In this document: in pieces, positions 1,120 to 30,135 of the stretch
Numbering within the stretch: the stretch's first letter is position 1
Layout of the letters: every line of letters begins with the position of its first letter
Virus record (IMG/VR): IMGVR_UViG_3300029267_004162
Location: 62,001 to 126,000 of that record
Strand: one strand, 5' to 3'
Length of the DNA: 64,000 bases
Notes under the pieces: generated by a model
What the model was told of the DNA's origin: nothing
The model's database searches: none
Seen by the model: only the letters and a program-made list of their open reading frames with translations
Position numbers and translations under genes: made by a program

Positions 1120-2121
1120 TTAGCCCCAGTACCAATCGACAAGTCCTTCAAAGGTCTTAGAGGCAGTTTTGATAGTCCCCCTCGACGGAAGATAGGGTTT
1201 TAAGGGTTTTACAGAGTTGTAAGTCCGTGCTGGGGTAGTACGAATGGTGACTCCACCTACTGCATCGATAGCAGAATCATGCAGCATTTTCTCTGCCTTC
1301 TTTTTGCTAATAGGACTCCGCGCTACCCTCTTTTTATACAAGGCCTCAATTTTCTTACCCTCAACCTTTATCTTGTTAGCTTCTTTTTTATCCCTAGCAA
1401 CGGCTACAAAAACAAGGCTGGTCCCTTTGGGCGTTCGCTTACGAATTTGCGGTCTTCCCGGACCACCCTGAGCATTACTCGTTTTTTTGCCGTCGAGCCT
1501 AACAAACCATTTAAGGGTCTTATTCAAAGCAGATATAAAAGGTCGGTCAAATTCATGAGGGTAACCACTCTGTATAAACATGGTAGTTACACTGGCCCCG
1601 GTAGATACAGAAAGGTCTTCCTCCACCCTCATCTTATTCACTATCGCCTTGGGTGCCCCTTTTCCTGGAGCCCAGTCTATATCTACACCTTCAACCAATG
1701 TCAGCAAAGTATCGAGAACATTATTGAAATTACCGGGACCCTTTGTTCCACTAAAGGTGTAAGTATCAAAATCTATTGATCCTACCTGGTCATCGGTAAC
1801 TGAATCATAGAAACCAGCAAAACGGCTTTTCATTGTTTTAACTTCAGTCTTCTTCTTACCACGAGCGAACAGAGGTAGAAGTTCCTTATAGGCCTCCTCC
1901 GTCAAACTAGCAGAGTGTTTAATTCTACCCTTTAGAATTAATATATATTCGCCAGAATAGGATATTGTACCACCGCTTTCATGCATCTCATCAACCGAGC
2001 TAGTCTCTGGAAAGACCTTTATTGTAAGTTCATCGGTAGATGCGGAACGGAGGGCTTCTGCCTTGCTAAATAAGTCAGCGGCCTTTTGTTCAAAAAAATC
2101 AGCTAAAAGTTCGATATTCAT
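1120..2121 (-). CDS. Hypothetical protein, candidate internal head protein, flanked by direct repeats
   Basis: 333-aa ORF with SD AGGAG; N-terminal LADFFEQKAADLFSKAEAL motif shared with two other ORFs; basic C-terminal half. Confidence 0.7.
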   Translation of the reverse strand: MNIELLADFFEQKAADLFSKAEALRSASTDELTIKVFPETSSVDEMHESGGTISYSGEYILILKGRIKHSASLTEEAYKELLPLFARGKKKTEVKTMKSRFAGFYDSVTDDQVGSIDFDTYTFSGTKGPGNFNNVLDTLLTLVEGVDIDWAPGKGAPKAIVNKMRVEEDLSVSTGASVTTMFIQSGYPHEFDRPFISALNKTLKWFVRLDGKKTSNAQGGPGRPQIRKRTPKGTSLVFVAVARDKKEANKIKVEGKKIEALYKKRVARSPISKKKAEKMLHDSAIDAVGGVTIRTTPARTYNSVKPLKPYLPSRGTIKTASKTFEGLVDWYWG

Positions 2122-2143
2122 GTTAACTCCTACTTTCTTTCAT

Positions 2144-2222
2144 GAAGTTGAGCTAAAAACCGTCTAGTTAAATCTCTTGATAATTCCAAGATGAGTTTGT
2201 TCATAGCCTATTTCCATCCCGC
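2144..2222. repeat. 79-bp direct repeat, copy 2
   Basis: 77/79 identical to 1025-1103; overlaps a 24-aa truncated ORF (2130-2204) whose TAG overlaps the SD of the 333-aa gene. Confidence 0.95.
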
Positions 2223-2459
2223 TTGTTGTAATGTTTGCATGGCCTTCTGCCGGGTCTTATTATTCTTCTGATGTTTGGGGTCGGTAAATTCGATATCAAC
2301 AACCCGTTTTCCTGGCTTGGAAAGCCCAGCACAGATCACGTCTTTCCCTCGGTATACTTTTACGTAGCCATCCTCTTCAACCACTTTCCAAATAGTAGAT
2401 TCGAGAGAATAGAGAAGTTCTGTCCAACTCTTCTTCATGGTAGCGAATCCTAACCCCAT
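2208..2459 (-). CDS. Hypothetical protein (start may be 2438)
   Basis: ORF track; packed in the minus-strand operon. Confidence 0.6.
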   Translation of the reverse strand: MGLGFATMKKSWTELLYSLESTIWKVVEEDGYVKVYRGKDVICAGLSKPGKRVVDIEFTDPKHQKNNKTRQKAMQTLQQAGWK

Positions 2460-3538
2460 CGAGGGATATGGGCCTTTCTGGTTCTAACAGCTACTACCGC
2501 TTGAATTCCCGTGTCATATCGGTATTGTTTCTTGGCTGCTGGTAGGGTGCCGGCGGCTCCACCTCCCCCACCATCGGCTCCAATGTCCCTCTCTAATCGA
2601 CCAAGCTCTTCACTGAGAAAACTCAGGTGATCATATTCGAGGGTGATGGTCTGACCACCATACGAAAATTGCATGTCACCTTCGAGTAGATACTGCGTTC
2701 TGAGAGTCCACCACGCAGCGGCTTCCACGAGAAAATGCTCGAACCATTGCCAGGGGAAATTGCTGAAAGTCCAAGTGCTAAAGGGGTGTACGCGATTTAC
2801 ATAATTGAGAGCCTTTACATAATTGTTGCATAGCTCTCCATCGCTATACGCTTGGATAATCCCAGCCTGTTTTTGGATTTTGTCTACGTAAACTCGCAGT
2901 TGTTTGATCAGACTGAACATAACGTGAGGTGCTGACCAGACGATATCGACTACCCGTTCAAAAGGCTTTCCGGTGAGTGGACGGTACTTCCAATAGATGA
3001 GGTATTCACCTCGCGTCAAACCAGGCAGTGAAAGCGTATAGCGGTACTGATCGGGTTCCTGTACTTCAATAACCTTGTTGCTGATTGCGTAGGTACCGAT
3101 TGAAGTAGGTGTTGGGAACTTGATGCCTTCCAAACTGCCGATGTATTCCACTTGAACAGATAAATCCACCACTGGAAAATCAGAGAACATTTCCCAGACG
3201 TCGGATTCGTTTTCCATCACGAAACCAACTTGCTTGTACTCTTCTGTTATGGGGTGGGCTACTACCACGAAAAAGCGAGAGATGGTATCCGTGTGGTCCC
3301 CACCACCGTATGTATAGGTCCACTCTATTTGGTGAGCCCCGAAAGTGGGATAACTGGGAACAGTCCAATCAAAAGCATACGCCTGAGGACCGGCCAAAGT
3401 GGCGGGGCCTTGCGTCAGGGTAGTGGTATTGGGATCCCGAATTACTACCTGCACCGCCCCATCTGGTACATGGGGAAGCGTTTCCCGAAAAGTAGTCTCC
3501 TTTTCGGGGAGTAGATTAGGTATGATTTGGTGAGCCAC
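2450..3538 (-). CDS. Putative neck / head-tail adaptor protein
   Basis: 362 aa, GTG start with GGAG SD; beta-rich N-terminus and helical C-terminus (LRVYVDK...YSDGEL...ALNYVN...QFSYGGQTITLEYD) resembling large-phage neck proteins. Confidence 0.5.
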   Translation of the reverse strand: MAHQIIPNLLPEKETTFRETLPHVPDGAVQVVIRDPNTTTLTQGPATLAGPQAYAFDWTVPSYPTFGAHQIEWTYTYGGGDHTDTISRFFVVVAHPITEEYKQVGFVMENESDVWEMFSDFPVVDLSVQVEYIGSLEGIKFPTPTSIGTYAISNKVIEVQEPDQYRYTLSLPGLTRGEYLIYWKYRPLTGKPFERVVDIVWSAPHVMFSLIKQLRVYVDKIQKQAGIIQAYSDGELCNNYVKALNYVNRVHPFSTWTFSNFPWQWFEHFLVEAAAWWTLRTQYLLEGDMQFSYGGQTITLEYDHLSFLSEELGRLERDIGADGGGGGAAGTLPAAKKQYRYDTGIQAVVAVRTRKAHIPRWG

Positions 3539-3553
3539 CTAAATCTCCTTGGG

Positions 3554-3736
3554 TTAGCGATCAAGACCGCCCCGACGACGTTTTCGTTTATTCTGCTTAA
3601 TAAATTTCCTCACCAGAGGATCCTTACTAAGTTTGCGCATCCGCCGTTCGGCTTCCTCCAAGACTTCCTCGGTGATTTCCCCACCCAATCCCATAGATAC
3701 ACTAACTTCTTCAGCAAAGCGCTTGATAGCACTCAT
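3554..3736 (-). CDS. Small basic hypothetical protein
   Basis: 60 aa, SD GGAG, KRKRRR tail. Confidence 0.55.
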   Translation of the reverse strand: MSAIKRFAEEVSVSMGLGGEITEEVLEEAERRMRKLSKDPLVRKFIKQNKRKRRRGGLDR

Positions 3737-3755
3737 CTTTTCTTCTCCGGTTGTG

Positions 3756-4574
3756 TCAGTCGTTCATCGTATCAAAAACTTCTTTGACCATTAGGGAAGC
3801 CTCAACATCAGAGACTACTTTACCTGTCGGTTTAGTCATTTGATACGCCTTATGAATAGTCCATTGCTCCCCGGTTGCGTGGGGTACTAGGCAAACTCCC
3901 CTTTTCTTGGGGAAAACTACCAAGATTTTGTTGTGATCGGATTGAATTTGAACTGGGCCTCCAAAGCGCTTTGTGCGATGGCGGTTGTCCCAAATAGCCT
4001 GAGCAACGGCAGTATCTGCTAATTGAGGCTTTTTGTTCGGGGGATCATCACCCCCACAAGAGGCTTCCCCTGAATTATACAAAGGGCTAGGTGATTGAAA
4101 CCGGCTATCACGACCTGTGCCCTGTGGTTGGGGGTTGGTTTGCCAATGAGGGGGATTGCCCCGGCCAGGACCAAATGGTAGAGGACTACGCCACCGCCAA
4201 GGAGCGGTTTGAGTATCATTATCGACGCGTGGACGGCGATACCAAGGTTTAGTGAAGTGCCAAGGCATCGCACCAGATGGATCCAAAATAGATTTGGCCA
4301 AGAGAGCAGCTAGACGCGATCTACATCGTTGCTTTCGTTGTTCTTGACGACTTTCTAGTGAAGCAGCCAGTTGTTTTGCAGTTTTGATCCATCGTGGAGC
4401 ATGAAGATCATCCATGGCCTCTTTGATTACTTTACAAATTCGCAAAGCAGCCTTACGCTTGGATGGACTTGTTGAGGGATTTCTAGCGAGTTTGTACAAA
4501 CCCTGAGAGGTTTGATACAGGATGGTTTGCGCCTCGACTAGATCTTTGATAATATTACTCATCAGCATTCTCAT
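3756..4574 (-). CDS. Hypothetical protein
   Basis: 272-aa ORF, Pro/Arg-rich middle segment. Confidence 0.65.
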   Translation of the reverse strand: MRMLMSNIIKDLVEAQTILYQTSQGLYKLARNPSTSPSKRKAALRICKVIKEAMDDLHAPRWIKTAKQLAASLESRQEQRKQRCRSRLAALLAKSILDPSGAMPWHFTKPWYRRPRVDNDTQTAPWRWRSPLPFGPGRGNPPHWQTNPQPQGTGRDSRFQSPSPLYNSGEASCGGDDPPNKKPQLADTAVAQAIWDNRHRTKRFGGPVQIQSDHNKILVVFPKKRGVCLVPHATGEQWTIHKAYQMTKPTGKVVSDVEASLMVKEVFDTMND

Positions 4575-5664
4575 CCAATTCAGTAACTTCAGGGTCCGGT
4601 GACGCTGCCGCCCTTTGCTTTTTGGTATTGGAAATGGCTTTGACTAAGCAACCATTAGCTACTGTGAAGAAGGGGTCTTCAGCCAGGCGGACTACCTTGG
4701 CTTGGAAAGGCAGACTAAATTGAGACAGTACCTCACGGAAACGCTCAATGAAACCAGGTACACAAGCCGTTCCCCCGGCTACTACAATTTCAAGCGGGCT
4801 ATCTATCTGAGTTTCCAATTTGTTGAATTCATTGGAGAGCTGTTTCAAAACCCCCTGGATCATCTCGGTATACGCATGGGTCAAGGCTAGTTTCTTGAGG
4901 TCTGTTGGATTCTTCTCTCGAAGATCAAGTTCTTTTTCTTTGAATCGCTGTAAAACCGAGACTTCCATGTCCAGCATGTTGGCTGCTTGCTGATCAATCC
5001 AATCACCAGATTGAGCAATCGAGAACATAATCAATGGCAGTTTTTTCCATGCCATACATATATTAACCATCCCAGCTCCGCACGAGATAGAAATCCCGGA
5101 GAAGGGGTGTTCACCCTCTTCATCCTCAGCCACGGGGCACTCACTAAAGATGATAGCCAGTGCTTCCGGAATGCACTCAACCTGGTAACCCAGGCTCATA
5201 AAGAACCCAGTCATGATAGCCTGGTGAAAAGTGACCGTGATATTGGGGTTATCAATGGGTTGGGCGGGAGCGCAATACACCAAGTGTTGGTTCTTGCAGG
5301 GCTGACCGAGCAAATTGCGGAGAATTTGCTGGATAATGGCGATACTGAGTTTTTCTCCACCTGTGTTCAGGATTCCATGACGCATAGGACGGCGAAGAGC
5401 ACCTACTCGGGTAGCAACGATATCAGTAGCATCACCCCCCAGGGACAGAGTGTTTTTCAGGCGAATAGCGTCCTCCCCTACCACATAGTAGTCGCCATCT
5501 TGTTGAACAAAGGACCAGTCGTTTTCACGCAGAAACTCCTCCGTGTCAACGGTAGACGCTGCCTGTAAAAAACAGTTGCGTTCTTGGGTGAATTCTGTAT
5601 CCCCTTCGTCAGACAATTTGCTTTTGACTAAAAAGGCGGTACCTACATCTAATCCAATGGCCAT
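4555..5664 (-). CDS. Actin-like ATPase (MreB/MamK/ParM/FtsA superfamily)
   Basis: All five actin-fold motifs in order: IGLDVGT (phosphate 1), IPEALA (connect 1), ISCGAGMVN (phosphate 2), VVAGGTA (adenosine), PFFTVANG (connect 2). Confidence 0.85.
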   Translation of the reverse strand: MAIGLDVGTAFLVKSKLSDEGDTEFTQERNCFLQAASTVDTEEFLRENDWSFVQQDGDYYVVGEDAIRLKNTLSLGGDATDIVATRVGALRRPMRHGILNTGGEKLSIAIIQQILRNLLGQPCKNQHLVYCAPAQPIDNPNITVTFHQAIMTGFFMSLGYQVECIPEALAIIFSECPVAEDEEGEHPFSGISISCGAGMVNICMAWKKLPLIMFSIAQSGDWIDQQAANMLDMEVSVLQRFKEKELDLREKNPTDLKKLALTHAYTEMIQGVLKQLSNEFNKLETQIDSPLEIVVAGGTACVPGFIERFREVLSQFSLPFQAKVVRLAEDPFFTVANGCLVKAISNTKKQRAAASPDPEVTELDENADE

Positions 5665-5673
5665 CTTAGCTCC

Positions 5674-6225
5674 TTATAGTTCGTCAGCCAAATCCGCTGC
5701 CCGGCTTTTCTTCTTTGTTTTTTTCTTCTTCTTTTTACCCTGACCCTTGAGGCCCGATTGATCAATGGACTTCTGGGTAATTTCAGCTAACAGATGTGGG
5801 TCAACGGAAGTACCACTTTCCAGAGCACCTTCTACTGATCCACTTGTTACCGTTGTTGTAGATTGACCGATTTGGTTTTTGATACCCAGCAAGAGGTCTT
5901 TCAACTCAGCTACTTGGGCATTAGCTTTTTCTTCGGCTCTTTTGTCGATTATTGTTGCCAACTTATCCAAATCAATTTCGGCTGAATGGTTATGTTGATG
6001 GGTTACTTTTCTTCCAACGACGGTTTTTGGTTTTTGATCTACTACCAGACGAAGTTTTTTCTCTCGGATCAAACGACGAAGTGTTTCGCTCGCACGAAGC
6101 TTCTTCCGAGAGATAAACTCTTCCAGATCTACGGTACGATTTTGGCCGATCTCTACATTCAATTCGGGAATGAAGACCGGACCAGGATTGGGATTGAAAA
6201 TGGTGTACAAGCCACTCGTCCTCAT
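5674..6225 (-). CDS. Hypothetical protein, candidate actin adaptor
   Basis: 183 aa, 9 bp upstream of the actin gene; small N-terminal domain resembling ORF 11151-11408, a helical segment and a poly-Lys tail. Confidence 0.65.
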   Translation of the reverse strand: MRTSGLYTIFNPNPGPVFIPELNVEIGQNRTVDLEEFISRKKLRASETLRRLIREKKLRLVVDQKPKTVVGRKVTHQHNHSAEIDLDKLATIIDKRAEEKANAQVAELKDLLLGIKNQIGQSTTTVTSGSVEGALESGTSVDPHLLAEITQKSIDQSGLKGQGKKKKKKTKKKSRAADLADEL

Positions 6226-6603: not shown

Positions 6604-7056
6604 TTATGGTAGGGGCCAGACTACGGTCCCGTCAACTAATTTGACCTCGTCAGTGGTCTCCCAATTGACATTGAAAAACACCTTCACTGGGTCTCCACCA
6701 TCTTCAACAACGTCCATATTACAATCTATCTTGTCCTCACCGCTAGGTTTATCAAAGGTGAGAGTTATTTCTGAGGCGGTTACGTCAACCTGACAGTCGG
6801 TTGCTGATGACTTAGCAATGTTATCAGCGGTCAGATTGGTTCCTGTGATGGTGATTATCTGCTGAGTGGCTATCCCATAGAAAGGGTCATGTATTAGAAA
6901 ATCGTTTGGTGATTTTTCAAACAAGACACCACACTTATCAAAGAAATCAAAGGCTTCTGCGAGAACAAATTCCTCCTCATCACTTATTGCCGGTACGTTA
7001 GGGTATTGATCATTTGTCTGCCGCATACTCGAAGCGGTTAAAGATTGAATATTCAT
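6604..7056 (-). CDS. Hypothetical virion-associated protein
   Basis: 150 aa acidic, beta-rich; SD AGGAG; follows a fibre gene. Confidence 0.6.
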   Translation of the reverse strand: MNIQSLTASSMRQTNDQYPNVPAISDEEEFVLAEAFDFFDKCGVLFEKSPNDFLIHDPFYGIATQQIITITGTNLTADNIAKSSATDCQVDVTASEITLTFDKPSGEDKIDCNMDVVEDGGDPVKVFFNVNWETTDEVKLVDGTVVWPLP

Positions 7057-7064
7057 AATTGCTC

Positions 7065-8669
7065 CTATGTCGCAAAATTGCCATGTGATACATTACCAGG
7101 AAAAGTCCCATCCGCAGGGGAGAAGTTAAAACTAGAATATGCACTAACGGTACTGTTGGATATCGTGATAGTACAGTTGGAACCTGCCGGTCCTTGGTAC
7201 CCTGTTCCTCCGGTTAGATAGATACTAGTACCACCTCGGGAGTGTCCAAACAGCGGAAGACTAGATGTACCGGATCCATTTTGAATTACCTGTCCACCCC
7301 AGGTTAGGGTGGATTGTTGAGCAACATGGGCAAAGCCATCGTATTGGTTGACTCGGAGACTACTGAATGAACAACTAGCTCGGTTGATGATATACAAGAA
7401 TATAGACGATAGCGTCCCAGGACCTTGCACACGACCACTAAAGGTAAAATTGCCTTGGCTAGAATCAAGCTGAATGAAGTAGCCTGAACTAGAAAAGGGG
7501 ATTGTGGCGGTACTTGAAATACCAACTTCAATACAACTCGCTGAGTAACCATAGAACATCTTCATAGAACCGGGTGTGGTAACTGTTAAAGAACCTAGTC
7601 CAGCTCGGTAATAAGAACCCATGGATACTTTGACCCCATATGCACCAATCGAGGTTAGTGACAGGTCACCACTCTGTTCCAGATAGGATCCGTATTGAAC
7701 ATCCAACGCGTTTGTGACATCGCTAATAGTAATGTCACACAGGAGGAAAGCTCGCGAACGTTTCACCACGAAGCCCACAGTGTTAGCAACACCAGGCCCG
7801 GTGAAATTTAAATCCTGTTGGATATTAGCAGAGGAAAACTCATTTACCCAAAATCCTACCCACCCGGTGATACCACCATTATGAGTAATGGTGATGGTAG
7901 TTGAATCATCTTCACCATAAAAACAACTACCGTTGATTACCTGAATACCTGTTTTGTCTGTGGGTACCCGGACTTGAAGATTGTCCTGAATAGTGAAAAC
8001 GGAGTTTTTATCAACTTGGATACCAAAAGTAGGAGATGAAGTCTGTCCTACTCGAAGTTCAGTGAGGGCTGTGTATCGACTGTTTTCACATAGTATGCCC
8101 ACTGCTGAAGTGTCAACCTCTACGATTCCATCACTTTGTACTACCGCACCATGATTGAGGACAAAAGCGTTGGCAGCACCGGTATTGGCGTAAAGATCCT
8201 TCAAAATCACGTTACAGTTTGCGAAGGTCGATTGAGAATTGAGAACAGTGCCACTGCCTCCAAAACTGGTGTAGTTACCTTCGATTGTAAGAGAGCCATT
8301 TGGTCCTACTGGAATACCCTGAAGATCAAATCCCGCAAAGGAAGCAGTTTCTTTGATATCAATGAGCACAGCAGCATCTATGCATCTGCCTTGTAGGTCT
8401 TGGATCGCCCTGTTGATGGTAGCATAGGCGGTTCCAGAAGTAGAGCCATCACCAGTGGTATCATTACCAGCCGCTCGGACATAAATGGTGAGAGCGGTAC
8501 TAATCGCACCTTCATTGGCCCACACTGATCCATCGTAAACGCGAAGACCAGCTACATTCTGGTTGAAGTACACCCTTCCTGCGGTTCCAACTGGATCAAC
8601 CGCCAAATTTTCGAATCGGGGGTTTATTAGATAACCCCCAGCTAATTGAAGATCACCATTCAAAAGCAT
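7065..8669 (-). CDS. Tail fibre / tailspike with pectin-lyase-like beta-helix
   Basis: N-terminal GRVYFNQ...LRVYDGSVW anchor motif, IYVRAAGNDTTGDGS...YATINRAI beta-helix cap, then repetitive G/S/V/I-rich strands. Confidence 0.7.
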   Translation of the reverse strand: MLLNGDLQLAGGYLINPRFENLAVDPVGTAGRVYFNQNVAGLRVYDGSVWANEGAISTALTIYVRAAGNDTTGDGSTSGTAYATINRAIQDLQGRCIDAAVLIDIKETASFAGFDLQGIPVGPNGSLTIEGNYTSFGGSGTVLNSQSTFANCNVILKDLYANTGAANAFVLNHGAVVQSDGIVEVDTSAVGILCENSRYTALTELRVGQTSSPTFGIQVDKNSVFTIQDNLQVRVPTDKTGIQVINGSCFYGEDDSTTITITHNGGITGWVGFWVNEFSSANIQQDLNFTGPGVANTVGFVVKRSRAFLLCDITISDVTNALDVQYGSYLEQSGDLSLTSIGAYGVKVSMGSYYRAGLGSLTVTTPGSMKMFYGYSASCIEVGISSTATIPFSSSGYFIQLDSSQGNFTFSGRVQGPGTLSSIFLYIINRASCSFSSLRVNQYDGFAHVAQQSTLTWGGQVIQNGSGTSSLPLFGHSRGGTSIYLTGGTGYQGPAGSNCTITISNSTVSAYSSFNFSPADGTFPGNVSHGNFAT

Positions 8670-10385: not shown

Positions 10386-10726
10386 GCTAGGGCTTCACGA
10401 CAGGCCTCATTATGATGTTTAATTTCAAAATCTTGAACCACCATATCTTGAGGTGGCTTAAATCTCCCGATGGTTTCAACACCATTATAGACCCCAAAGA
10501 TCATCGTGACTATTTCATTCGCAAATTCTGTAGCTGATCGAAGGCCTTCGCCATGGAAAACTTCCATGTAGAAAGTCTTATCAACACCATCATGTGTTTT
10601 GGAAGCGGTCACATTGATGAAGGAGGAATCCACTTCTCTTTGGAGCCTGTATCCCCGACTCTTAAGGAGTTGTGAAACATCCCTTAGGAAAGTCCCAGCA
10701 AACTGGGTAACGATTTGAAGACTCAT
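10364..10726 (-). CDS. Hypothetical protein
   Basis: ORF track; ATGA coupling to the HNH gene. Confidence 0.65.
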   Translation of the reverse strand: MSLQIVTQFAGTFLRDVSQLLKSRGYRLQREVDSSFINVTASKTHDGVDKTFYMEVFHGEGLRSATEFANEIVTMIFGVYNGVETIGRFKPPQDMVVQDFEIKHHNEACREALAWFKQYA

Positions 10727-11151
10727 AATTTTCTTCCAATTTGAAGGTTAGCCTGTCGATCTAGGATAGCCTGGATAAACCGAACATAGCTGGTTTCTCC
10801 AGCCGCCCTGGATTGTTCCTTCAACTTGAGGATTGTTCCAGGAGATAGGTTCAAACGAACTTGTTTCGTCTCGACCTCATCTGGTTCAATTATCTTATCA
10901 GCGATCGTCCGGGCCAAACTGAAACACAGTTGATATTTGGGTGATCCTGGCATCCATTTGGTACTGACCAGGGAAGAAGCGGCTCCAGAATTGCTGATCA
11001 ATTTTAAAGCCACGGCATGAATCAACCGATGACAATTGGGGCAAATATCGGTTAGATTGTGTTGCTCATCGGATCCCCCAAAAGCCTGGGGGATCTTGTG
11101 ATGTTCTTCACCAACCGGACAAAGTTCGGTACAGAGACCGCACCGAATCAT
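10723..11151 (-). CDS. HNH endonuclease with C-terminal ribbon-helix-helix-like segment
   Basis: CGLC...HHKIPQAFGGSDEQHNLTDICPNCHRLIH; start moved to the ATG at 11151 (TGATG overlap). Confidence 0.85.
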   Translation of the reverse strand: MIRCGLCTELCPVGEEHHKIPQAFGGSDEQHNLTDICPNCHRLIHAVALKLISNSGAASSLVSTKWMPGSPKYQLCFSLARTIADKIIEPDEVETKQVRLNLSPGTILKLKEQSRAAGETSYVRFIQAILDRQANLQIGRKL

Positions 11152-11408
11152 CAGACGATAACTAGTTGACGCGACAGGATGGCGTCTTTTAGTTTCTTGT
11201 TGCCTTTGAGGACACCGCCTGGGGCTTTCTTGCACAAATCTACAGATTGACCGGATTGAATTATGATCCGGGTCTTCTTAAATTCACCACCTTTTTTATG
11301 GTCAATGAACTCAACCGGGATAGAAATCTCACCAGCTACGGTACTACGAACGGTGCAAGCACCAGCGTTCAACTTCTCAACTAATTTGCCAAACATTGAA
11401 GTTGCCAA
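11151..11408 (-). CDS. Small hypothetical protein downstream of tape measure
   Basis: 85 aa, TTG start with AGGAG SD; IQSGQSVDL...LKDAILSRQLVIV resembles the N-terminus of ORF 5674-6225. Confidence 0.6.
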   Translation of the reverse strand: MATSMFGKLVEKLNAGACTVRSTVAGEISIPVEFIDHKKGGEFKKTRIIIQSGQSVDLCKKAPGGVLKGNKKLKDAILSRQLVIV

Positions 11409-19239: not shown

Positions 19240-22200
19240 TTAGTAAACACCCTGTTCATCCGGGACCAAATAACGACCCAGGACCGGTGCGATGAACGCT
19301 TGAGCAGGAGTAATCTCTCCAAAACCAGACCGATTTACACCGGTAAACAATTTGAGGACACCTGCATCATTGACCAGGTTAACCAAGGCGACTAGACCCG
19401 AAGTAATAGGAGGTAGACCAGTGAGAGTAGCCCTACCAGCCTGCGGGGTAGACCAAGTAACACGAGTTACTGATTCGTCTATGTTTTCCACAGAGTTGGG
19501 GAATACATCGGTCCAGGTACCCATGACATCTTCATAGAACTTGGCAGTCACAACACGTGTGCCGAATCCATGTGTGATGGTCCATACGGTAGATGGAATG
19601 GTTTGATTATGAACCAATTGACTACCGGTGTCACTCTTAGGCTCAAGCAAGTCACCCTTGGGATAAGCAAGAGCGGTTACCTTATCGATCCACACCCCGG
19701 CTATAGGAATATCTGACACGAAGGGATAAGACTTCAAGTCCATGACTGCGGTATCACCACGCACATACAGGGATGGGTCAAGAGCAGCGTTGCGACCAGC
19801 ATCACCAATGATGTGTTTAACACCACCGAACTGAGGGAAGACCTGACCAATGGGGGTCAAGTAATTGGCACCCGGATTAGCTGTACCATCTGTTGTGGCT
19901 ATAAAGCGACCTTCAGATAAGAAGTAAAGCTGATCAGCGGTAGCTGTGGAGAGAAGCTGGAATTGTTCTTGTCTGGGCAACATGTTGTACCAGACTCGAA
20001 TTATATCTGATTGATCCAGGTGACGGCTTTGGATTACACCTAGGTAAGCACTAGGTGCCACACCTGTTACCAGACTACCGTTTCGTGTTCCCGTGGTGGT
20101 TTGATAAACAAAGCTGCCTACCTCCAAGTTGCCTCCGGCTGGAACCGGACCAACTCGATCACGGGTTAACATGCGAACGAAGCCACGCATTCCCGGACGC
20201 CAATCAAGATAAACCTGACCTGGTTCCATGGGATGAATGGTCAGGGTATCGCCCGGATTAATGGCTCCACTAAAAGCACTATCAACCTCGACTTCTTGCG
20301 TGGTGTGATCATAGGCAATGATGAGACGAAGCTCTCCAGCCGAACCGGTAGACGAGCCAATAACCTGTAACCATTCACCCACGTACGATCCAGCAACAGT
20401 AGAACCGCTGGTCAAGATGACATGCGTAGGAGCACCACCGGGTGTGGAGCTAGTGGCAACGCCATTGAAAGTAAAGTTATCCAGATTAACCAAGTCCCCA
20501 TCGATAAGGGGATAAGCAGTAGAACCATCTTCAGCTAGAAGGGGCAGGCCCTCGGTAACGTGGCGGAAACCACCGCCAGCGGGATAAAGAATTTGACACC
20601 AGATTACGCAAGTTTCACCGGAGTGAGCAGCGTGATCAGTTACATCGACCACACAAGCTGCTGAACTAGTGCCCAGGCCGCTCCAAGGAGTTGACAGAAC
20701 CACTGACGAAATGTTACCTGATGCGTCCACCCAATGCATAATTGGGGCTGTAGTATGGACATATGGGTCTCCGCTCAGAGAAGTTGTATTCAGAGTAACT
20801 GCTCGACTGGAGGGGTCATATGTCAGGAGATTAGCGGGATTTTCTGAGCCAGGTAGACCTTGAGTAAAGCGGCTCACCATATCCATGAGATTAGCTTTAT
20901 CTGACCAGTGATTTCGGCAGTTGTCTGGGAACATGGTCAGAGAAGCATCATTACCCTCATCCAGCCAAACACCGACTTGGTGTCCAGCACCGAAAGGATT
21001 GTTAGTCCCAATGCCCCCGCCTGTTAGCATGTTGGTACCTCGGATACCATTTCCAGAGATGGCACCAGAAGCAACACCAAACTCATCCTCTCCCCAATCC
21101 ACCACGTTTTGGCCAGACAGTAAAGCCTGCGACATGGATTCCATGATAGTTGAAAGGCCATTCAACAGCACTGTATGACGGAAGTCACAAATGTCCTGAG
21201 GATAGACCACATCAAAGAATTGGGCGTCTGGACGACCGTTCTGGCCACCACCACCGGCTAGACTGCCTTGGGTACCATCAGCGGTATTCAGGGCAGAACC
21301 ATTGCCATTGGTATGACTCCAAATGTCTTGGTTACGACGGTGGATACCACACAGAGGAATAGCGTAGACAAAACCATCGACAGTTTCTAGACCAGAACCA
21401 GTTTTGTCTCCAGCCCCACCAGTACCAGCCCGGAATAACATGGTATCACCCAACAGTTCATTCATCTGCTGGAAGATTTTACCAGAGACGGGTGCGCCAG
21501 TTGCGCCACGTGCCTCAACGGCTGCGTTATCGATACCGAATGGTGTAGCACCGGCTGGATCGAGCCAATCAGCACTGGCTGGACCATCAATTACACGAAC
21601 ACGATATCGGATTTGGAAATATTGGCCATTGGTTTGGTGGCCAATGGTACTTACTACGGCAGGATCCACAGGATCAGCAACTGAGCCACCAACGTAATCA
21701 ACGTTGCCATACGGGAAGAACGTTGGACTGGTAGTGCTGACTTCTTCCATCCAGACTTCTAGGAAGACCAAGTCCTGCCGATACCCAGTTCCAGGGGCGG
21801 CTGACAAAGTAATAGGGAATTCCCAACCGCTGGTATCGTCTTGAATCAACGACAGAAGAGTGCCATTGACCAGAGCCAATGGTGCTTCTCGGCCAATATC
21901 GTGGCGAGCGAGCAGGAATTGATTGGCGACGGTTAGATCACAATAGACACCAGGGAATGCGGGAGTAAGACCAGCAAAGGGTCTACGTGAACCCAAATTA
22001 GTGAAACCGCTCTTACCAAGTGCTTGGGCCAAACCGCGAAGACGACCCAAGGCGTTTTCACCACTAGCAAGTAAACTACTAGCAGAGGAAACAGGTTCCC
22101 AGGCGGAATTGCCACCCACATAGAAAACACCTGCACCAATGTCATACAGGAGCCTACCTAGATCGGCAGGATTACTGTAGGTAGGGAGAGAATTAGGTGG

Positions 22201-22263
22201 AACGGAAGTATCCACCCTCTGGACGATGATTGGCCCAGTTGCTTCAATTTTATGAAACTTCAT
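19240..22263 (-). CDS. Large tail fibre / baseplate-associated structural protein
   Basis: 1007 aa, G/S/T/P-rich; RQDLVFLEVW...YRVRVIDG and YAIPLCGIHRRN...RPDAQFFD motifs typical of myovirus fibre/baseplate proteins. Confidence 0.7.
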   Translation of the reverse strand: MKFHKIEATGPIIVQRVDTSVPPNSLPTYSNPADLGRLLYDIGAGVFYVGGNSAWEPVSSASSLLASGENALGRLRGLAQALGKSGFTNLGSRRPFAGLTPAFPGVYCDLTVANQFLLARHDIGREAPLALVNGTLLSLIQDDTSGWEFPITLSAAPGTGYRQDLVFLEVWMEEVSTTSPTFFPYGNVDYVGGSVADPVDPAVVSTIGHQTNGQYFQIRYRVRVIDGPASADWLDPAGATPFGIDNAAVEARGATGAPVSGKIFQQMNELLGDTMLFRAGTGGAGDKTGSGLETVDGFVYAIPLCGIHRRNQDIWSHTNGNGSALNTADGTQGSLAGGGGQNGRPDAQFFDVVYPQDICDFRHTVLLNGLSTIMESMSQALLSGQNVVDWGEDEFGVASGAISGNGIRGTNMLTGGGIGTNNPFGAGHQVGVWLDEGNDASLTMFPDNCRNHWSDKANLMDMVSRFTQGLPGSENPANLLTYDPSSRAVTLNTTSLSGDPYVHTTAPIMHWVDASGNISSVVLSTPWSGLGTSSAACVVDVTDHAAHSGETCVIWCQILYPAGGGFRHVTEGLPLLAEDGSTAYPLIDGDLVNLDNFTFNGVATSSTPGGAPTHVILTSGSTVAGSYVGEWLQVIGSSTGSAGELRLIIAYDHTTQEVEVDSAFSGAINPGDTLTIHPMEPGQVYLDWRPGMRGFVRMLTRDRVGPVPAGGNLEVGSFVYQTTTGTRNGSLVTGVAPSAYLGVIQSRHLDQSDIIRVWYNMLPRQEQFQLLSTATADQLYFLSEGRFIATTDGTANPGANYLTPIGQVFPQFGGVKHIIGDAGRNAALDPSLYVRGDTAVMDLKSYPFVSDIPIAGVWIDKVTALAYPKGDLLEPKSDTGSQLVHNQTIPSTVWTITHGFGTRVVTAKFYEDVMGTWTDVFPNSVENIDESVTRVTWSTPQAGRATLTGLPPITSGLVALVNLVNDAGVLKLFTGVNRSGFGEITPAQAFIAPVLGRYLVPDEQGVY

Positions 22264-24015: not shown

Positions 24016-24020
24016 AAGGG

Positions 24021-25289
24021 TTATTGTGATTGTTGTTCTATATAAGTCTTAATTCTGTTTACAAATTGCTTATAATTGGTCTTCCCCTCCGTAAAGACAA
24101 ACACTCTATAGCCTGCTTTTTTCAATTTCGACATTTTAGTTTTAATAGCCTGTTGTCTTTTCTTATCCCCATAGAGGAAATCGGACTGGTGCGCGGTTCC
24201 ATCATACTCCACCACCAGGTTTAATTTGTGATTAATGGCATCTACGACTGCCCGAAGATTATCTATGCCAGGGGATTTCCTTCGTTCAAAAAGAACACCT
24301 GTATCACGTTGCAAAGTGCTGATAAATGTTTCTTCGGCTCCACTACTAATCTTGGTCAGACCTAATCGCCGAATAAACTCTGACCAATTCCCAAAGACAT
24401 GTTCTGCATGGGCAGCAGTGTACCGTTTACTATGTTTGTTAAAGAGGGGACGAGTCAAGAACTCTCTTCCCGTGTCTTGCTTGATCAGTTTTACGATCCG
24501 GCGACCTTCCAACATCAAAGCCATATCTGGCTTCACCAAGGAACGGTCCATAATTTTGTGTGTTTTGACATCTTGAGTTTTGGTGATATAAGTGGTGTGT
24601 TGTTCCGGTACAAAAACATCTTCCCACCCCTTAGTGGTTTTACACCGAAAAATGTACCCCAACCGAGCGTGGCCATCTAGTAGAACAACTGAGTGTTTCT
24701 CATCAGCTTTCTTAGTTTTACGAAGTTTATGGCCTTTTCGTAAACTTAACTTGGTTTGAATCCGGTCACGACCCGTATTGAGGCCATAAGCGATAGCCTC
24801 TGGTACCCACACCTTAATTTTGTCGTCTACGAATTGAACTTGAACCAAACCACGTTTGGGATTAAAATCAATTGTCTTTGCCCAGAACCATGCTAATCCA
24901 CCTGTCTTAGCAGCTACGGGATTGTCATTTTTATCGAGCCAGATTTTGACCTTCTTATTTAAGGATCGTTTAAGAGTCCACTTACGGGCCTTGTCTTGAA
25001 CTACTCGATAAACTGTCATAGGACGAATAGTAGAGTATTCACCACCAGGACTAGCCATTCCTACTGCCATCGCTTGGAGATCATGGCGAGTATAAAATCC
25101 TGGAGCAGGACCAAGCCCAATCTTCTCTAAAGCCTCGACAAACCGAGAGAATTGACTCCGCTTGGGAAACCTATGCACATATTCTGGCCAAGTAGTAGAG
25201 GTGGTGGGTCGACCTTTTCCCGGCCAATCCAAAAACTCTTCTAGGTGAATACTGGTACCTATGCGTTGTAGTAGCTGAGTGAAAGTCAT
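24021..25289 (-). CDS. Protein with C-terminal Vsr/DUF559-like PD-(D/E)xK nuclease domain (homing-endonuclease-like)
   Basis: AEHVFGNWSEFIRRLGL repeat-like segment, then SSGAEE...VDAINHKLNLVVEYDGTAH...K...LKKAGYRVFVF. Confidence 0.65.
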   Translation of the reverse strand: MTFTQLLQRIGTSIHLEEFLDWPGKGRPTTSTTWPEYVHRFPKRSQFSRFVEALEKIGLGPAPGFYTRHDLQAMAVGMASPGGEYSTIRPMTVYRVVQDKARKWTLKRSLNKKVKIWLDKNDNPVAAKTGGLAWFWAKTIDFNPKRGLVQVQFVDDKIKVWVPEAIAYGLNTGRDRIQTKLSLRKGHKLRKTKKADEKHSVVLLDGHARLGYIFRCKTTKGWEDVFVPEQHTTYITKTQDVKTHKIMDRSLVKPDMALMLEGRRIVKLIKQDTGREFLTRPLFNKHSKRYTAAHAEHVFGNWSEFIRRLGLTKISSGAEETFISTLQRDTGVLFERRKSPGIDNLRAVVDAINHKLNLVVEYDGTAHQSDFLYGDKKRQQAIKTKMSKLKKAGYRVFVFTEGKTNYKQFVNRIKTYIEQQSQ

Positions 25290-27497: not shown

Positions 27498-27505
27498 AAT
27501 GGATC

Positions 27506-28096: not shown

Positions 28097-28126
28097 GGTA
28101 CACCTCCTTATTCTAGAGAACTAACC

Positions 28127-28342: not shown

Positions 28343-28411
28343 CCATTTTCTCCTGTTATTGAATTAGCGACTGGAACTAGTAAATTTCCTAAATACGCTA
28401 CGACCGAACTC

Positions 28412-28996
28412 TCAACTGTTCGATGCCCTCAACTCATCTCGCAAAGCAGTGTCGCCGTATTCTTTTTCATCCTGAGCCAATGAGGCTTGGATTACCAACT
28501 GAGATGGACGACCCGTTTGCTTGAAGTGTTGCAGCTTAGTTAGGAAATTGGTAAACCGGGATACATCTAGAGTGGGCGATTTCTCGCCTAGTCCAAGAGC
28601 ATACCGCAAAATGGTCTCGGGAGTCACATCCATACGCTCTTGTGGGGAAGTATATGGTGCTGTTCGTTCTCCCTGTGATCGTAATTGATCGGCTTGGGAA
28701 AGCAATTTTGCTGCTTTCTTTTCCATCGCACTGGCGAGTTGCAATAATTTGCTGGACATTCGAATATTCTCCGATTTAATTTTAGGTTGTGACCAACCCT
28801 GGGGAAGTTCCCTATTTCTTGATACTTCAATTCGTTTGTAGATATCAGTAGCTAAGCCATAGGCGTTGGCCTTTTTTAAGACCTGCTTGGCTTCTTCATG
28901 GGAAAGAATCTTACGTTTAGCGATGGAAGAAGCAGCAGCCTTAACTGCTTTTTTCCAACTCTCCTCGTTTCTTTTTGTTTTGACAAATGCTGGCAT
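28412..28996 (-). CDS. Hypothetical two-part protein (ChaB-like N-terminus; internal start at 28759)
   Basis: MPAFVKTKRNEESWKKA...AYGLATDIYKRI, then in-frame ATG with GGAG SD starting MSSKLLQLASAMEKKAAKLLSQADQL. Confidence 0.6.
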   Translation of the reverse strand: MPAFVKTKRNEESWKKAVKAAASSIAKRKILSHEEAKQVLKKANAYGLATDIYKRIEVSRNRELPQGWSQPKIKSENIRMSSKLLQLASAMEKKAAKLLSQADQLRSQGERTAPYTSPQERMDVTPETILRYALGLGEKSPTLDVSRFTNFLTKLQHFKQTGRPSQLVIQASLAQDEKEYGDTALRDELRASNS

Positions 28997-29015
28997 ATAC
29001 TTTCAGATTTTAAAA

Positions 29016-29106
29016 GGGGGCGAAGAGAGATTCGAACTCCCACGGCCCGTTCAACTAACGGGGTGCTACCCAAGTCGCTTTTCAACACGATTACATCATT
29101 CGCCCC
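29016..29106 (-). tRNA. Atypical tRNA-like element (8-bp acceptor, 5-bp T stem, no canonical D/anticodon arms)
   Basis: GGGGCGAA/TTCGCCCC stem, GGGAG-TTCGAAT-CTCTC T arm, CCCGTT/AACGGG hairpin; intergenic; no encoded CCA; anticodon not assignable. Confidence 0.5.
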
Positions 29107-29108
29107 AG

Positions 29109-29768
29109 TTAGACGATTCCAGCACGCTTATTTAGGATATACAGGGCTGATCTAGCTTTTACCATGTTCTTAGTGCCTTCAACTAGTTTGCGAACGACAG
29201 CAATAAGCCATTTGACTGCAGCTTTTGCCATGTCTCGCAATCCGGATTCTACACTAACTTCCAATCTGGTAAATTCGGTTGTTTTTTCCAGACTAGCGTG
29301 CAGAGCATCCATGATTTGTCGTTGGGCAGCACTCAGTTTATTGAAGGCTTTTTCATAGAGAGACTTCCAAGAAACGGTGGTACGCGAGTTTGTTTTGATC
29401 GCGACCAATTGAGAATCAGTTTTGAAGGTTTCAACCTCTGCTTTATCAGCGGCTTTGAGAATTTTGGCCTCTACAGTATCTCGTCTCGCAATCGCTTCTT
29501 CTAGATCCGCTTTCATCTTCCGAATCTTCTCGTTAAAACTTAAAAACTCATCACACAGTTTTTCGACACCCTTCGCATTCTTAATCTTCGTAACTTTGGG
29601 AACTTTTGGTTTCGGAGCCTTGGTAATCTTTTTCTGCACACTTTCGATGTCCAGATCAGATTCCAATTCCTCATCGTCGGGTCGTATCCATTTTGCACGA
29701 TCCCCCTTCTTCTTGGGCTTAACGGCGGATTTGAGCAAAAAACCATTTGTGTCTGAGTATCGAATCAT
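29109..29768 (-). CDS. Basic coiled-coil hypothetical protein (candidate internal head protein)
   Basis: Lys-rich; start moved to MIRYSD. Confidence 0.65.
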   Translation of the reverse strand: MIRYSDTNGFLLKSAVKPKKKGDRAKWIRPDDEELESDLDIESVQKKITKAPKPKVPKVTKIKNAKGVEKLCDEFLSFNEKIRKMKADLEEAIARRDTVEAKILKAADKAEVETFKTDSQLVAIKTNSRTTVSWKSLYEKAFNKLSAAQRQIMDALHASLEKTTEFTRLEVSVESGLRDMAKAAVKWLIAVVRKLVEGTKNMVKARSALYILNKRAGIV

Positions 29769-29772
29769 TTGT

Positions 29773-30135
29773 TCACCTAATAGACCCAAATTCTTTTAGT
29801 TGAACAGCCGCATCAAGATGCTGCTGCATAATCTGAAGGTTACGCATCCCTCTTTCTGTGTAGCTATCTCGATCACGAGATGAAGCCAGCTTAAGTTGCT
29901 TTTCTACTAGCGTTTGTCGCCTTCGAATTTCTGGAAGGTCTAACTTCGCGAGCCAAGCGATCAGCTTTTTGTGCTGGCCCTGAGTGAGTTTCTGAAGATC
30001 ATGCGGATAGTTCCCCCGAGACCAGATCCCCTTGTAAGTCTTGACCGTAATGCCATCTTCAGTTAGCTTAGCGGCAGCACTGAGAAGCAGATGGGCCTTA
30101 GCTTCCAGTTTATCAGCGAGATTATGATGTCGCAT
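29773..30135 (-). CDS. Hypothetical protein with shared N-terminal motif
   Basis: Start moved to MRHHNLADKLEAKAHLLLSAAAKL (SD GAGGA). Confidence 0.65.
   Translation of the reverse strand: MRHHNLADKLEAKAHLLLSAAAKLTEDGITVKTYKGIWSRGNYPHDLQKLTQGQHKKLIAWLAKLDLPEIRRRQTLVEKQLKLASSRDRDSYTERGMRNLQIMQQHLDAAVQLKEFGSIR

What the first reader, a model, noticed from the sequence alone, without database searches (positions are those of the whole stretch)
1120..30135. Shared N-terminal signal on three otherwise unrelated proteins (candidate capsid-targeting sequence)
Seen: LADFFEQKAADLFSKAEAL (ORF starting at 2121), LADKLEAKAHLLLSAAAKL (30135) and LASAMEKKAAKLLSQADQL (internal start 28759) fit LAxxxExKAxxL[LF]SxAxxL at the extreme N-terminus, after which the sequences largely diverge. 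Established: T4 internal proteins share a short N-terminal capsid-targeting sequence. Inference: a portable packaging tag for proteins injected with the DNA, such as anti-defence cargo.
Basis: partly seen in the sequence, partly recalled or inferred. Interest (0 to 1): 0.65.

Follow-up and report, generated by a model that had tools for sequence, protein, structure and literature searches.

The report
Portable docking helix on four phage proteins
An uncultivated 262-kb jumbo phage carries the same roughly 20-residue amphipathic helix on four otherwise dissimilar basic proteins encoded among its virion genes, most likely as a shared docking module for virion assembly, but it is not a strictly N-terminal signal and nothing shows that the proteins are packaged or injected.

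Summary
The motif is real. In an HMM scan of the proteome the four copies score 34.6-43.6 bits and the next hit scores 4.1. Each copy's best non-self hit is another copy. Codons differ, so selection acts on the peptide.

The motif is not an N-terminal signal:
- It is N-terminal in two carriers (P0001, P0003).
- It is internal in the 194-aa P0002. The 80 codons upstream are coding and conserved in a relative.
- It is C-terminal in the fourth carrier.

All carriers are basic and sit in late/virion gene neighbourhoods. P0001 also holds a Big_2-like Ig domain, which usually marks surface-exposed virion proteins.

No homologues of the motif exist elsewhere. However, metagenomic relatives (MCP 41-55% identical) each carry their own short motif on several proteins near the MCP gene, in some cases including scaffold-like proteins and a ferritin-like protein.

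Best reading (0.45): a lineage-specific portable docking helix that attaches several virion-module proteins to one common partner. A T4-type cleaved capsid-targeting sequence, injection and an anti-defence role are all unsupported. This is a new variant of a known kind, of moderate interest.

The parts
1120..2121 (-). P0001, 333 aa, pI 9.5. Carries the motif at its N-terminus.
   Evidence: Translation. Strong SD (AGGAG) before the ATG at 2121. Codon score 0.35. No family hit. Only one remote hit among 1.84 billion representatives.
2050..2106 (-). Motif copy 1 (aa 6-24 of P0001)
   Evidence: Regex and HMM hits; 35.5 bits.
1357..1623 (-). Big_2-like Ig domain of P0001 (about aa 167-255)
   Evidence: phmmer hit to P0077, a 1280-aa protein with 8 Big_2 repeats. 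All 8 repeats align to aa 197-255, summed E 3.4e-14. Pfam on P0001 itself gave no hit at E 0.01.
29773..30135 (-). P0003, 120 aa from the SD-supported ATG (the longest ORF runs to 30192), pI 10.0. Motif at its N-terminus.
   Evidence: The single-sequence AF2 model is all-helical and the motif is helix 6-23 at low confidence. No fold match.
30064..30120 (-). Motif copy 2 (aa 5-23 of the 120-aa form)
   Evidence: 39.6 bits.
28412..28996 (-). P0002, 194 aa, pI 9.9. Motif is internal.
   Evidence: The region upstream of the motif is coding. The N-terminal 60 aa are conserved in L003:3494-4123. The public protein collection also holds the 194-aa form.
28682..28738 (-). Motif copy 3 (aa 87-105 of P0002). 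The internal ATG at 28759 would place it at aa 8-26 of a possible short isoform.
   Evidence: 34.6 bits.
31200..32315 (-). Major capsid protein (context)
   Evidence: phrog_2522, E 1.9e-56. 33% identical to the MCPs of Alexandravirus and Erwinia jumbo phages. 73 metagenomic homologues. A strong terminator at 31148-31177 follows it.
32489..33727 (-). Two very acidic proteins just upstream of the MCP gene: 183 aa (pI 4.4, with a basic tail) and 225 aa (pI 4.1). These are scaffold candidates and possible partners.
   Evidence: Composition. Both have orthologues in L003. No family hits. Neither carries the motif.

Best explanation
The motif is a portable amphipathic alpha-helix of about 20-25 residues, specific to this lineage. 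It has a stripe of alanines (positions 2, 9, 16) and leucines (5, 12, 19) on one face, flanked by an invariant Glu6 and Lys8. An invariant Ser14 lies on the opposite face. The helix is grafted at the N-terminus, the middle or the C-terminus of four basic proteins encoded in late/virion gene neighbourhoods.

It most likely acts as a common docking element. All four carriers would use it to bind the same site on one partner of the assembling virion. The partner could be a scaffold/core protein, the capsid protein or the portal/neck, so that dissimilar accessory proteins are recruited by one interface.

SHOWN:
- four copies;
- non-random similarity;
- selection at the protein level;
- variable position within the carriers;
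- virion-module context;
- absence of the motif from every relative found.

INFERRED:
- helicity;
- binding to a common partner;
- a role in assembly.

UNRESOLVED: whether the carriers end up inside the head or on the virion surface.
For: - Four copies and no more. They score 34.6-43.6 bits against 4.1 for the next protein. They are mutually best hits. The fourth was found independently at E 2.6e-5.
- Eight invariant columns out of 19, and the hydrophobic-moment direction is the same in all four (22-49 degrees).
- Identical residues are mostly encoded by different codons, and Ser14 uses both codon families. This indicates long-term selection on the peptide rather than recent DNA exchange.
- The position differs between carriers (N-terminal twice, internal, C-terminal), as expected of a self-contained module.
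- Context. P0003 and P0002 lie 1-3.5 kb downstream of the MCP gene. P0001 lies downstream of a connector-like gene (phrog_17327, E 1.9e-9). The fourth carrier lies in an operon that includes a gene with a virion-structural PHROG hit and a protein whose sequence looks spike-like to my eye (not tested by any tool). A portal and a prohead protease are present.
- All carriers have pI 9.5-12, and two highly acidic scaffold-like proteins precede the MCP gene.
- Relatives show the same logic with other peptides.
  - L003: FCPxCGxxL on four proteins, including the orthologues of the two acidic proteins.
  - L004, L006, L007 and L008: a motif of the form LDxVAExLExRGxxxLAxxVD, about 15 copies at N-terminal, internal and C-terminal positions.
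  - L006-L008: IAxLLxAGRxDLAxxV on several proteins, one of them ferritin-like. This motif weakly resembles the C-terminus of the acidic scaffold-like protein that follows the MCP gene in those phages.
- Shuffled controls of those loci gave 0-0.3 pairs.
Against: - No partner is identified. The one complex prediction (MCP with P0003) scored 0.00 and gives no verdict.
- The putative scaffold proteins of this phage do not carry the motif, unlike the situation in L003, L006-L008 and L004.
- No virion proteomics exist. The phage is known only from sediment and seawater metagenomes.
- P0001's Ig-like domain points to surface display, while the 66-aa pI 12 carrier looks like a DNA-binding internal protein. 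One location for all four carriers is therefore not obvious.
- Three more distant relatives (L011-L013) show no motif sharing.
- Structure models are of low confidence.
Confidence: 0.45

Rival explanations
1. Zipper model. The helices bind each other rather than a separate receptor. They would form a hetero-oligomeric Ala/Leu coiled coil or helical bundle that ties the four carriers into one complex, with P0002 (internal copy) as a possible hub.
For: - The heptad register has Ala at a and Leu at d over three heptads, with charged residues at the flanking e and g positions. This is typical of tightly packed coiled coils (general knowledge).
- In the nearest relative L003 the shared motif is a single CxxC knuckle. 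A single knuckle cannot bind zinc alone and so would need a second motif-bearing chain.
- The L003 orthologue of P0002 has a seven-Cys cluster about 20 residues after the conserved N-terminal domain, which is where P0002 has the helix.
Against: - The invariant Ser14 lies on the face opposite the hydrophobic stripe. This is easier to explain if a receptor wraps the helix.
- The positional correspondence with the L003 Cys cluster rests on a weak global alignment. Only the N-terminal 63 aa are significantly similar.
- No oligomer prediction was run.
Confidence: 0.2
2. Strict T4-type capsid-targeting sequence. An N-terminal propeptide binds the scaffolding core, gets the protein into the prohead, and is then cut off by the prohead protease. 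The matured proteins are ejected with the DNA.
For: - T4 internal proteins and Alt use a 10-20-residue N-terminal CTS that associates with the core and is removed by gp21 (PMC5694885).
- This phage has a prohead protease homologue (phrog_18299, E 3.6e-34).
- Two copies are N-terminal. A third could be N-terminal in a short isoform starting at the internal ATG, which has an SD.
- The carriers are basic, like the T4 internal proteins.
- The 334-aa protein encoded between the MCP gene and P0003 has a hydrophobic C-terminal region, reminiscent of ejection proteins.
Against: - One copy is C-terminal, and one is internal in the form supported by coding potential and conservation.
- No conserved protease site follows the motif. 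The invariant Glu6 lies inside it, preceded by FF, AM, KL or AL, so the P3 residue fits neither L/I-x-E nor A-x-E consistently.
- P0001 has an Ig-like domain.
- There is no evidence for injection or an anti-defence function.
Confidence: 0.12
3. Residual paralogy. The carriers descend from one duplicated gene, and the helix is simply the slowest-evolving structural element of a common fold. There would be no shared partner and no targeting role.
For: P0001 aa 167-246 and P0003 aa 26-90 share borderline extra similarity (BLAST E 3e-4; local-alignment shuffle p about 5e-4). This includes short shared strings such as YPH[DE] and P[EQ]IR[RK]R.
Against: - The helix sits at three different positions relative to the rest of the protein.
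- The 66-aa carrier consists of little more than a basic tail plus the helix.
- P0002 shows no significant similarity beyond the motif, and its orthologue lacks the motif.
- The P0001 segment concerned is Ig-like beta structure, while the P0003 segment is predicted helical at pLDDT 80-88. The extra similarity may therefore be spurious.
Confidence: 0.1
4. Amphipathic membrane- or filament-binding helix. The motif would target the carriers to the host membrane, or to the phage-encoded actin-like (volactin) filament, rather than to the capsid.
For: - All copies are strongly amphipathic (muH 1.0-1.3).
- A volactin-family actin homologue is encoded three genes upstream of P0001 (PF25216, E 6e-60).
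- Adaptors of bacterial actins typically bind through a terminal helix (general knowledge).
Against: - Membrane-targeting helices tolerate sequence drift, whereas here 8 of 19 positions are invariant, including polar ones.
- No test of actin binding was possible.
- The gene contexts are virion modules.
Confidence: 0.06
5. Chance resemblance of Ala/Leu/Lys-rich helices.
For: The pairwise BLAST E-values are modest (7e-4 for a single comparison).
Against: - The four copies are reciprocal best hits.
- There is a 30-bit gap to the next proteome hit.
- The fourth copy was recovered independently.
Confidence: 0.02

Closest known systems
T4 capsid-targeting sequence (CTS) of the internal proteins IPI-III and Alt
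   Same: A short conserved peptide shared by otherwise different basic proteins of a large myophage. It is proposed to give access to the assembling head, and a prohead protease exists in both phages.
   Different: The T4 CTS is always the N-terminal 10-20 residues and is cleaved off after a Glu (PMC5694885). Here the module is about 20-25 residues. It is N-terminal in only 2 of 4 carriers, has no consistent cleavage context, and one carrier has an Ig-like domain.
Encapsulin cargo-loading peptides
   Same: Short terminal peptides on unrelated cargo bind one site on an HK97-fold shell. In a relative of this phage (L008) a ferritin-like protein carries that lineage's shared motif, recalling ferritin-like encapsulin cargo.
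   Different: Encapsulin peptides are extended Gly/Ser-rich C-terminal tails (general knowledge), not Ala/Leu helices. No binding to the MCP is shown here (one search gave no verdict).
C-terminal helix-turn-helix coat-binding domain of the P22 scaffolding protein
   Same: It is a small helical element that is necessary for coat binding (bioRxiv 10.1101/2022.12.13.520362, abstract). Cargo fused to it is encapsidated in P22 VLPs (PMC9962691). In relatives L004 and L006-L008 the scaffold-like protein after the MCP gene ends in a G-containing two-helix segment that weakly resembles motif A on other proteins.
   Different: The motif of this phage is one continuous helix without the Gly turn. It is absent from the phage's own scaffold candidates. 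Its relation to the relatives' motif B is only P = 0.045 by profile-profile alignment.
Modular capsid decoration proteins (a small anchor plus an Ig-like domain, such as T5 pb10 or T4 Hoc)
   Same: P0001 combines a short terminal element with a Big_2-like Ig domain. Decoration proteins are reviewed in PMC7602432.
   Different: The anchors of known decoration proteins are folded domains rather than a 20-residue helix, and they are not shared with three other proteins.

Membership tests
T4-type capsid-targeting sequence | Located at the extreme N-terminus of every carrier | tested here: not met
   N-terminal in P0001 and P0003 only. Internal in the 194-aa P0002. C-terminal in the 66-aa carrier.
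T4-type capsid-targeting sequence | Ends at a prohead-protease cleavage site (L/I-x-E in T4, A/S/G-x-E in giant phages) and is removed | tested here: inconclusive
   The invariant Glu6 lies within the motif. The P3 residue is F, A, K or A, so only 2 of 4 fit A-x-E. The specificity of this phage's protease is unknown, and cleavage cannot be tested in silico.
T4-type capsid-targeting sequence | The phage has a prohead maturation protease | tested here: met
   Genome 13687-14436(+) hits phrog_18299 'head maturation protease' at E 3.6e-34, next to the portal (phrog_16240, E 1.2e-67). It is a homologue of the AD1 protease.
T4-type capsid-targeting sequence | Carriers are present in proheads or heads and are ejected | not testable with these tools
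   This is an uncultivated phage known only from sediment and seawater metagenomes, and no RNA or proteome data exist.
Encapsulin-like cargo-loading peptide | The peptide binds the interior of the HK97-fold shell protein | tested here: inconclusive
   MCP (49-row alignment) with P0003 gave ipSAE 0.00, no verdict.
P22-like scaffold coat-binding helix-turn-helix | Two helices joined by a turn at the C-terminus of the scaffolding protein | tested here: not met
   The motif is a single predicted helix with Ala at the position where the relatives' motif B has Gly. It is absent from the acidic scaffold candidates.
Relatives' motif B (LDxVAExLExRGxxxLAxxVD) | Detectable profile similarity | tested here: inconclusive
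   The motif B HMM finds nothing in this genome above 4.6 bits. hhalign places the two motifs in the same register, but with P = 0.045 and probability 1.2%.
Big_2 bacterial Ig-like domain (P0001 aa 167-255) | Sequence match to Big_2 repeats | tested here: inconclusive
   phmmer matches all 8 Big_2 repeats of P0077 (summed E 3.4e-14; BLAST 4e-7 to 4e-4 per repeat). The Pfam Big_2 model itself gave no hit on P0001 at E 0.01.
Coiled coil with an Ala/Leu core | Heptad pattern with small and Leu residues at a and d over at least 3 heptads | tested here: met
   A2, A9 and A16, and h5, L12 and L19, are invariant or conservative in all four copies. Oligomerisation itself was not tested.

The most novel reading that the evidence does not exclude
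A clade of uncultivated jumbo phages may use exchangeable, lineage-specific 'address peptides' to load a varied set of accessory proteins into or onto one capsid. The peptides seen are this Ala/Leu helix, a CxxC knuckle in the nearest relative, and two helix-Gly-helix motifs in others. The candidate cargo includes Ig-like, ferritin-like, DNA-binding-like and scaffold-like proteins. The peptide would co-evolve with its receptor on the scaffold or MCP. This would be a phage counterpart of encapsulin cargo loading, more general than the T4 CTS because the address works at either terminus or internally.
Probability: 0.2. Interest if true: 0.75.

Novelty: new variant of a known kind. Interest (0 to 1): 0.5.

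Why it matters
If the helix is a true address label, it would give a rule for how large phage heads or virions recruit many different minor proteins. That question remains open for jumbo phages, where long propeptides are only presumed to play the role of the T4 CTS (PMC5694885).

The rule would also be usable. A 20-residue tag that works at either end of a protein could load foreign proteins into a large capsid.

The comparative pattern also gives a handle for finding virion-associated proteins in uncultivated phages from sequence alone. Different motifs play the same genomic role in related phages, sometimes shared with scaffold-like proteins.

If the helix is only an oligomerisation zipper of a few neck or decoration proteins, the finding is ordinary.

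Tried and rejected
- Megablast of the window against GenBank phages found no match. tblastn of P0001-P0003 against phages found no match.
- The word-index protein search found only the query itself for P0001 and P0002.
- The exhaustive HMMER search with P0001 gave only a Big_2 repeat protein.
- IMG/VR scans with the MCP and with the tube-like protein found nothing.
- The metagenome scan returned the same phage (L010, 1 mismatch in 20.6 kb), so it gave no microdiversity information.
- PHROGs and Pfam on the carriers gave no families.
- ESM Atlas look-alikes of P0001 were unusable (pLDDT 0.32).
- AF2 of P0003 (pLDDT 64) gave no Foldseek PDB match better than E 0.7.
- AF2 of P0002 had pLDDT 45 and was used only as a helix prediction.
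- Complex prediction of MCP with P0003 gave no verdict (score 0.00). It is not evidence either way.
- Searching the motif profile in Dickeya phage AD1 found no hit. The 257-kb relative behind L004 is not held and could not be searched whole.
- I tested whether the motif is homologous to the N-terminal helix of the relatives' scaffold-like protein. There was no reciprocal HMM detection, so I dropped the idea.
- I tested whether the 321-aa DUF5661 protein is a scaffold paralogue. The similarity lies only in Lys/Arg-rich low-complexity tails, so I dropped the idea.
- I tested for extended homology between P0002 and P0001 or P0003 beyond the motif. It was not significant.
Both analyses were redone from files and coordinates.

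Full report
WHAT THE WINDOW IS

The window is bases 62,001-126,000 of a single 262,650-bp contig. Nearly all of its genes are on the minus strand.

- No GenBank phage matches it at the DNA level.
- The major capsid protein (MCP, 31200-32315, phrog_2522 at E 1.9e-56) is only about 33% identical to those of Alexandravirus and other Erwinia, Dickeya and Pseudomonas jumbo phages.
- The same genome occurs in sediment and seawater metagenomes. It is therefore an uncultivated jumbo myophage of a poorly sampled lineage.
- The portal and the prohead protease lie about 80 kb away, at genome 12-14.4 kb.

CHECKING THE OBSERVATION

The strict pattern occurs three times in six frames of the whole genome and nowhere else.

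It lies 7 kb beyond the window, at genome 133052-133252(-), which is L002:7052-7252(-). It scores E 2.6e-5 among 6,055 six-frame peptides.
- In single-seed and leave-one-out searches the four copies are each other's best non-self hits.
- Against the called proteome they score 34.6-43.6 bits, while the next protein scores 4.1.
- Eight of 19 columns are invariant: A2, E6, K8, A9, L12, S14, A16 and L19.
- Identical residues are mostly encoded by different codons, and the invariant serine uses both AGY and TCN codons.

The similarity is therefore real, it is maintained at the protein level, and it does not result from recent DNA exchange.

WHERE THE MOTIF SITS

- P0001 starts at 2121 behind a strong Shine-Dalgarno site, with the motif at aa 6-24.
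- P0003 most probably starts at 30135. That start has the better Shine-Dalgarno site and a 14-nt overlap with the upstream gene. The motif is then at aa 5-23 of 120.
- P0002 is different.
  - The first ~60 residues of the long form are conserved in the nearest relative, L003 (38% identity, E 8e-6).
  - The motif is therefore internal, at aa 87-105 of 194.
  - The internal ATG does have a GGAG 9 nt upstream, so a shorter co-product is conceivable but unproven.
- The fourth carrier is a 66-aa protein with pI 12. It is little more than a Lys/Arg-rich tail followed by the motif at its C-terminus (aa 43-61).

'Extreme N-terminus' therefore holds for two of the four copies.

WHAT THE CARRIERS ARE

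All four carriers are basic, with pI 9.5-12. All four are orphans: no PHROG or Pfam family matches them, and the phage and protein collections hold no homologues.

- The exhaustive search with P0001 found one protein, a 1280-aa protein with eight Big_2 repeats. All eight repeats align to P0001 aa 197-255.
- P0001 therefore contains a Big_2-like Ig domain at about aa 167-255. By general knowledge, this domain class in phages is typical of externally displayed structural proteins.
- P0003 is predicted to be all-helical, with the motif as the first helix at low confidence. It matches no known fold.
- P0001 and P0003 share borderline extra similarity outside the motif. However, one segment is Ig-like and the other is predicted helical, so I do not rely on this.
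- P0002 shares nothing significant with the others beyond the motif.

GENOMIC CONTEXT

In transcription order the region downstream of the MCP gene reads:
1. MCP;
2. a strong terminator (31148-31177);
3. a 334-aa basic protein with a hydrophobic C-terminal region;
4. P0003;
5. a 219-aa basic protein;
6. a tRNA-like element;
7. P0002;
8. a 71-aa ORF;
9. a 196-aa protein that is 68% identical to its L003 counterpart and weakly tube-like.

Upstream of the MCP gene lie two very acidic proteins, of 183 aa (pI 4.4) and 225 aa (pI 4.1). These are scaffold candidates, and both are conserved in L003.

P0001 lies downstream of a connector-like gene (phrog_17327) and of a volactin-type actin homologue.

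The 66-aa carrier lies in an operon with these other genes:
- a 109-aa protein with a virion-structural PHROG hit;
- a papain-family peptidase;
- a DUF5661 protein;
- a 639-aa protein whose sequence looks spike-like to my eye, which I did not test with any tool.

All four carriers therefore sit in late/virion neighbourhoods.

RELATIVES

Metagenomic MCP homologues gave loci from nine further phages. None contains the motif of this phage. Several of them, however, have a short motif of their own that is shared by different proteins around the MCP gene.

- **L003 (MCP 55% identical).** FCPxCGxxL sits at the N-terminus of three proteins and the C-terminus of a fourth. Two of these four are the orthologues of our two acidic proteins. 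The L003 orthologue of P0002 has a Cys-rich stretch roughly where P0002 has the helix.
- **L004, L006, L007 and L008 (about 40% identical).** A motif of the form LDxVAExLExRGxxxLAxxVD occurs about 15 times, at N-terminal, internal and C-terminal positions.
- **L006-L008.** A second motif, IAxLLxAGRxDLAxxV, occurs on several proteins.
  - One carrier has a ferritin-like domain (Pfam 28.9 bits).
  - This motif weakly resembles the C-terminus of the acidic scaffold-like protein that follows the MCP gene in those phages. These carriers were the top two non-self hits, at E 0.4-0.5.
- **Controls.** Shuffled controls gave 0-0.3 pairs per locus.
- **Not universal.** Three more distant relatives (L011-L013) and most 20-kb windows of this genome show no such sharing.
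- **Possible link.** A profile-profile alignment puts our motif and the LDxVAE motif in the same register (hAxxLExKA against VAExLExRG). The score is only P = 0.045, so a common origin is possible but not shown.

INTERPRETATION

The module behaves like a self-contained, position-independent interaction helix.
- It has a consistent hydrophobic face made of an Ala stripe and a Leu stripe.
- It has flanking Glu and Lys residues.
- It has an invariant Ser on the far side. This Ser argues for recognition by a partner that contacts more than one face.

My best-supported reading is a common docking element for virion assembly (confidence 0.45). It rests on three things: the motif occurs on four basic proteins in virion modules, acidic scaffold candidates lie next to the MCP gene, and related phages show the same pattern with other peptides.

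- It fails the N-terminal criterion for two carriers.
- It has no consistent cleavage context.
- It is at odds with P0001's Ig-like domain.
- Nothing supports injection or an anti-defence function.
- I give it 0.12. T4 CTS properties are taken from PMC5694885.

A zipper model, in which the helices bind each other, is a serious rival at 0.2. The Ala/Leu heptads and the half-site nature of the CxxC motif in L003 favour it. Residual paralogy (0.1), membrane or actin binding (0.06) and chance (0.02) are less likely.

WHAT COULD NOT BE SETTLED

- The partner is unknown. The only complex prediction allowed (MCP with P0003) gave no verdict.
- It is unknown whether the carriers are in particles at all, and whether the tag is cleaved.
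- The phage has no cultured host and no RNA or proteome data.

VERDICT

The motif is real and there are four copies, but it is not a strictly N-terminal signal.
A portable module with a plausible role in assembly targeting is supported. A T4-style CTS and injected cargo are not.
- I rate it a new variant of a known kind of device (short targeting or docking peptides), of moderate interest (0.5).
- The interest comes mainly from the clade-wide pattern of interchangeable motifs.

Noticed in passing
window 29013-29106 (-): A tRNA-like element lies between the 219-aa ORF and P0002. It has an 8-bp acceptor stem, a canonical T arm (GGGAG-UUCGAAU-CUCUC) and a long variable arm, but no recognisable D or anticodon arms. 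ARAGORN at default settings and Rfam do not call it. Only relaxed ARAGORN settings give inconsistent calls.
   Followed up: partly
window 4555-5664 (-): A 369-aa actin-fold protein matches the Pfam family Volactin over its full length (PF25216, E 6e-60). This is an archaeal-type actin homologue in a jumbo phage structural region.
   Followed up: no
L002:7262-8089 (-) and L002:6077-7042 (-) (genome 133262-134089 and 132077-133042): A papain-family cysteine peptidase (PF00112, E 2.4e-20) and a DUF5661 protein with a long Lys/Arg-rich tail flank the 66-aa fourth motif carrier. A DUF5661 protein also occurs near the MCP gene in relative L006.
   Followed up: partly
L004, L006, L007, L008 (loci around the MCP genes of relatives): Two apparently undescribed short helix-Gly-helix motifs, LDxVAExLExRGxxxLAxxVD and IAxLLxAGRxDLAxxV, recur on many different proteins per genome. 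None of the carriers scanned hit a Pfam family covering the motif. One carrier (L008:11342-12724) has a ferritin-like domain.
   Followed up: partly
L003:105-803, 835-1413, 4163-4918, 5615-6199: In the nearest relative, four proteins share a terminal FCPxCGxxL half zinc knuckle. The orthologue of P0002 (L003:3494-4123) has a seven-Cys cluster.
   Followed up: partly
window 31148-31177 (-): A 13-bp GC-rich hairpin followed by a T run lies directly after the MCP stop codon. It is a strong terminator or attenuator. The GTG 'start' of the next ORF at 31171 lies inside it, so that gene more likely starts at the ATG at 31126.
   Followed up: yes
window 7065-8669 and 6604-7056 (-); genome 4408-5892 and 5905-6369 (+): A 534-aa and 150-aa gene pair has a paralogous pair elsewhere in the genome (30% and 37% identity). 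This may be a duplicated structural module; no family hit identifies it.
   Followed up: no
window 24021-25289 (-), 10723-11235 (-), 19240-22263 (-): HNH or homing-endonuclease-like segments are embedded in, or lie between, structural genes. The hits are weak matches to PHROGs and to DUF559.
   Followed up: no
window 1-570 and 601-759 (-): Two adjacent ORFs of 244 aa and 52 aa share a 27-residue segment (59% identity, E 1e-5). This may be a small duplication or a split gene.
   Followed up: no
window 30122-31126 (-): The 334-aa basic protein encoded between the MCP gene and P0003 has a long hydrophobic, membrane-like C-terminal region. It overlaps the start of P0003 by 14 nt, which suggests translational coupling.
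   Followed up: no
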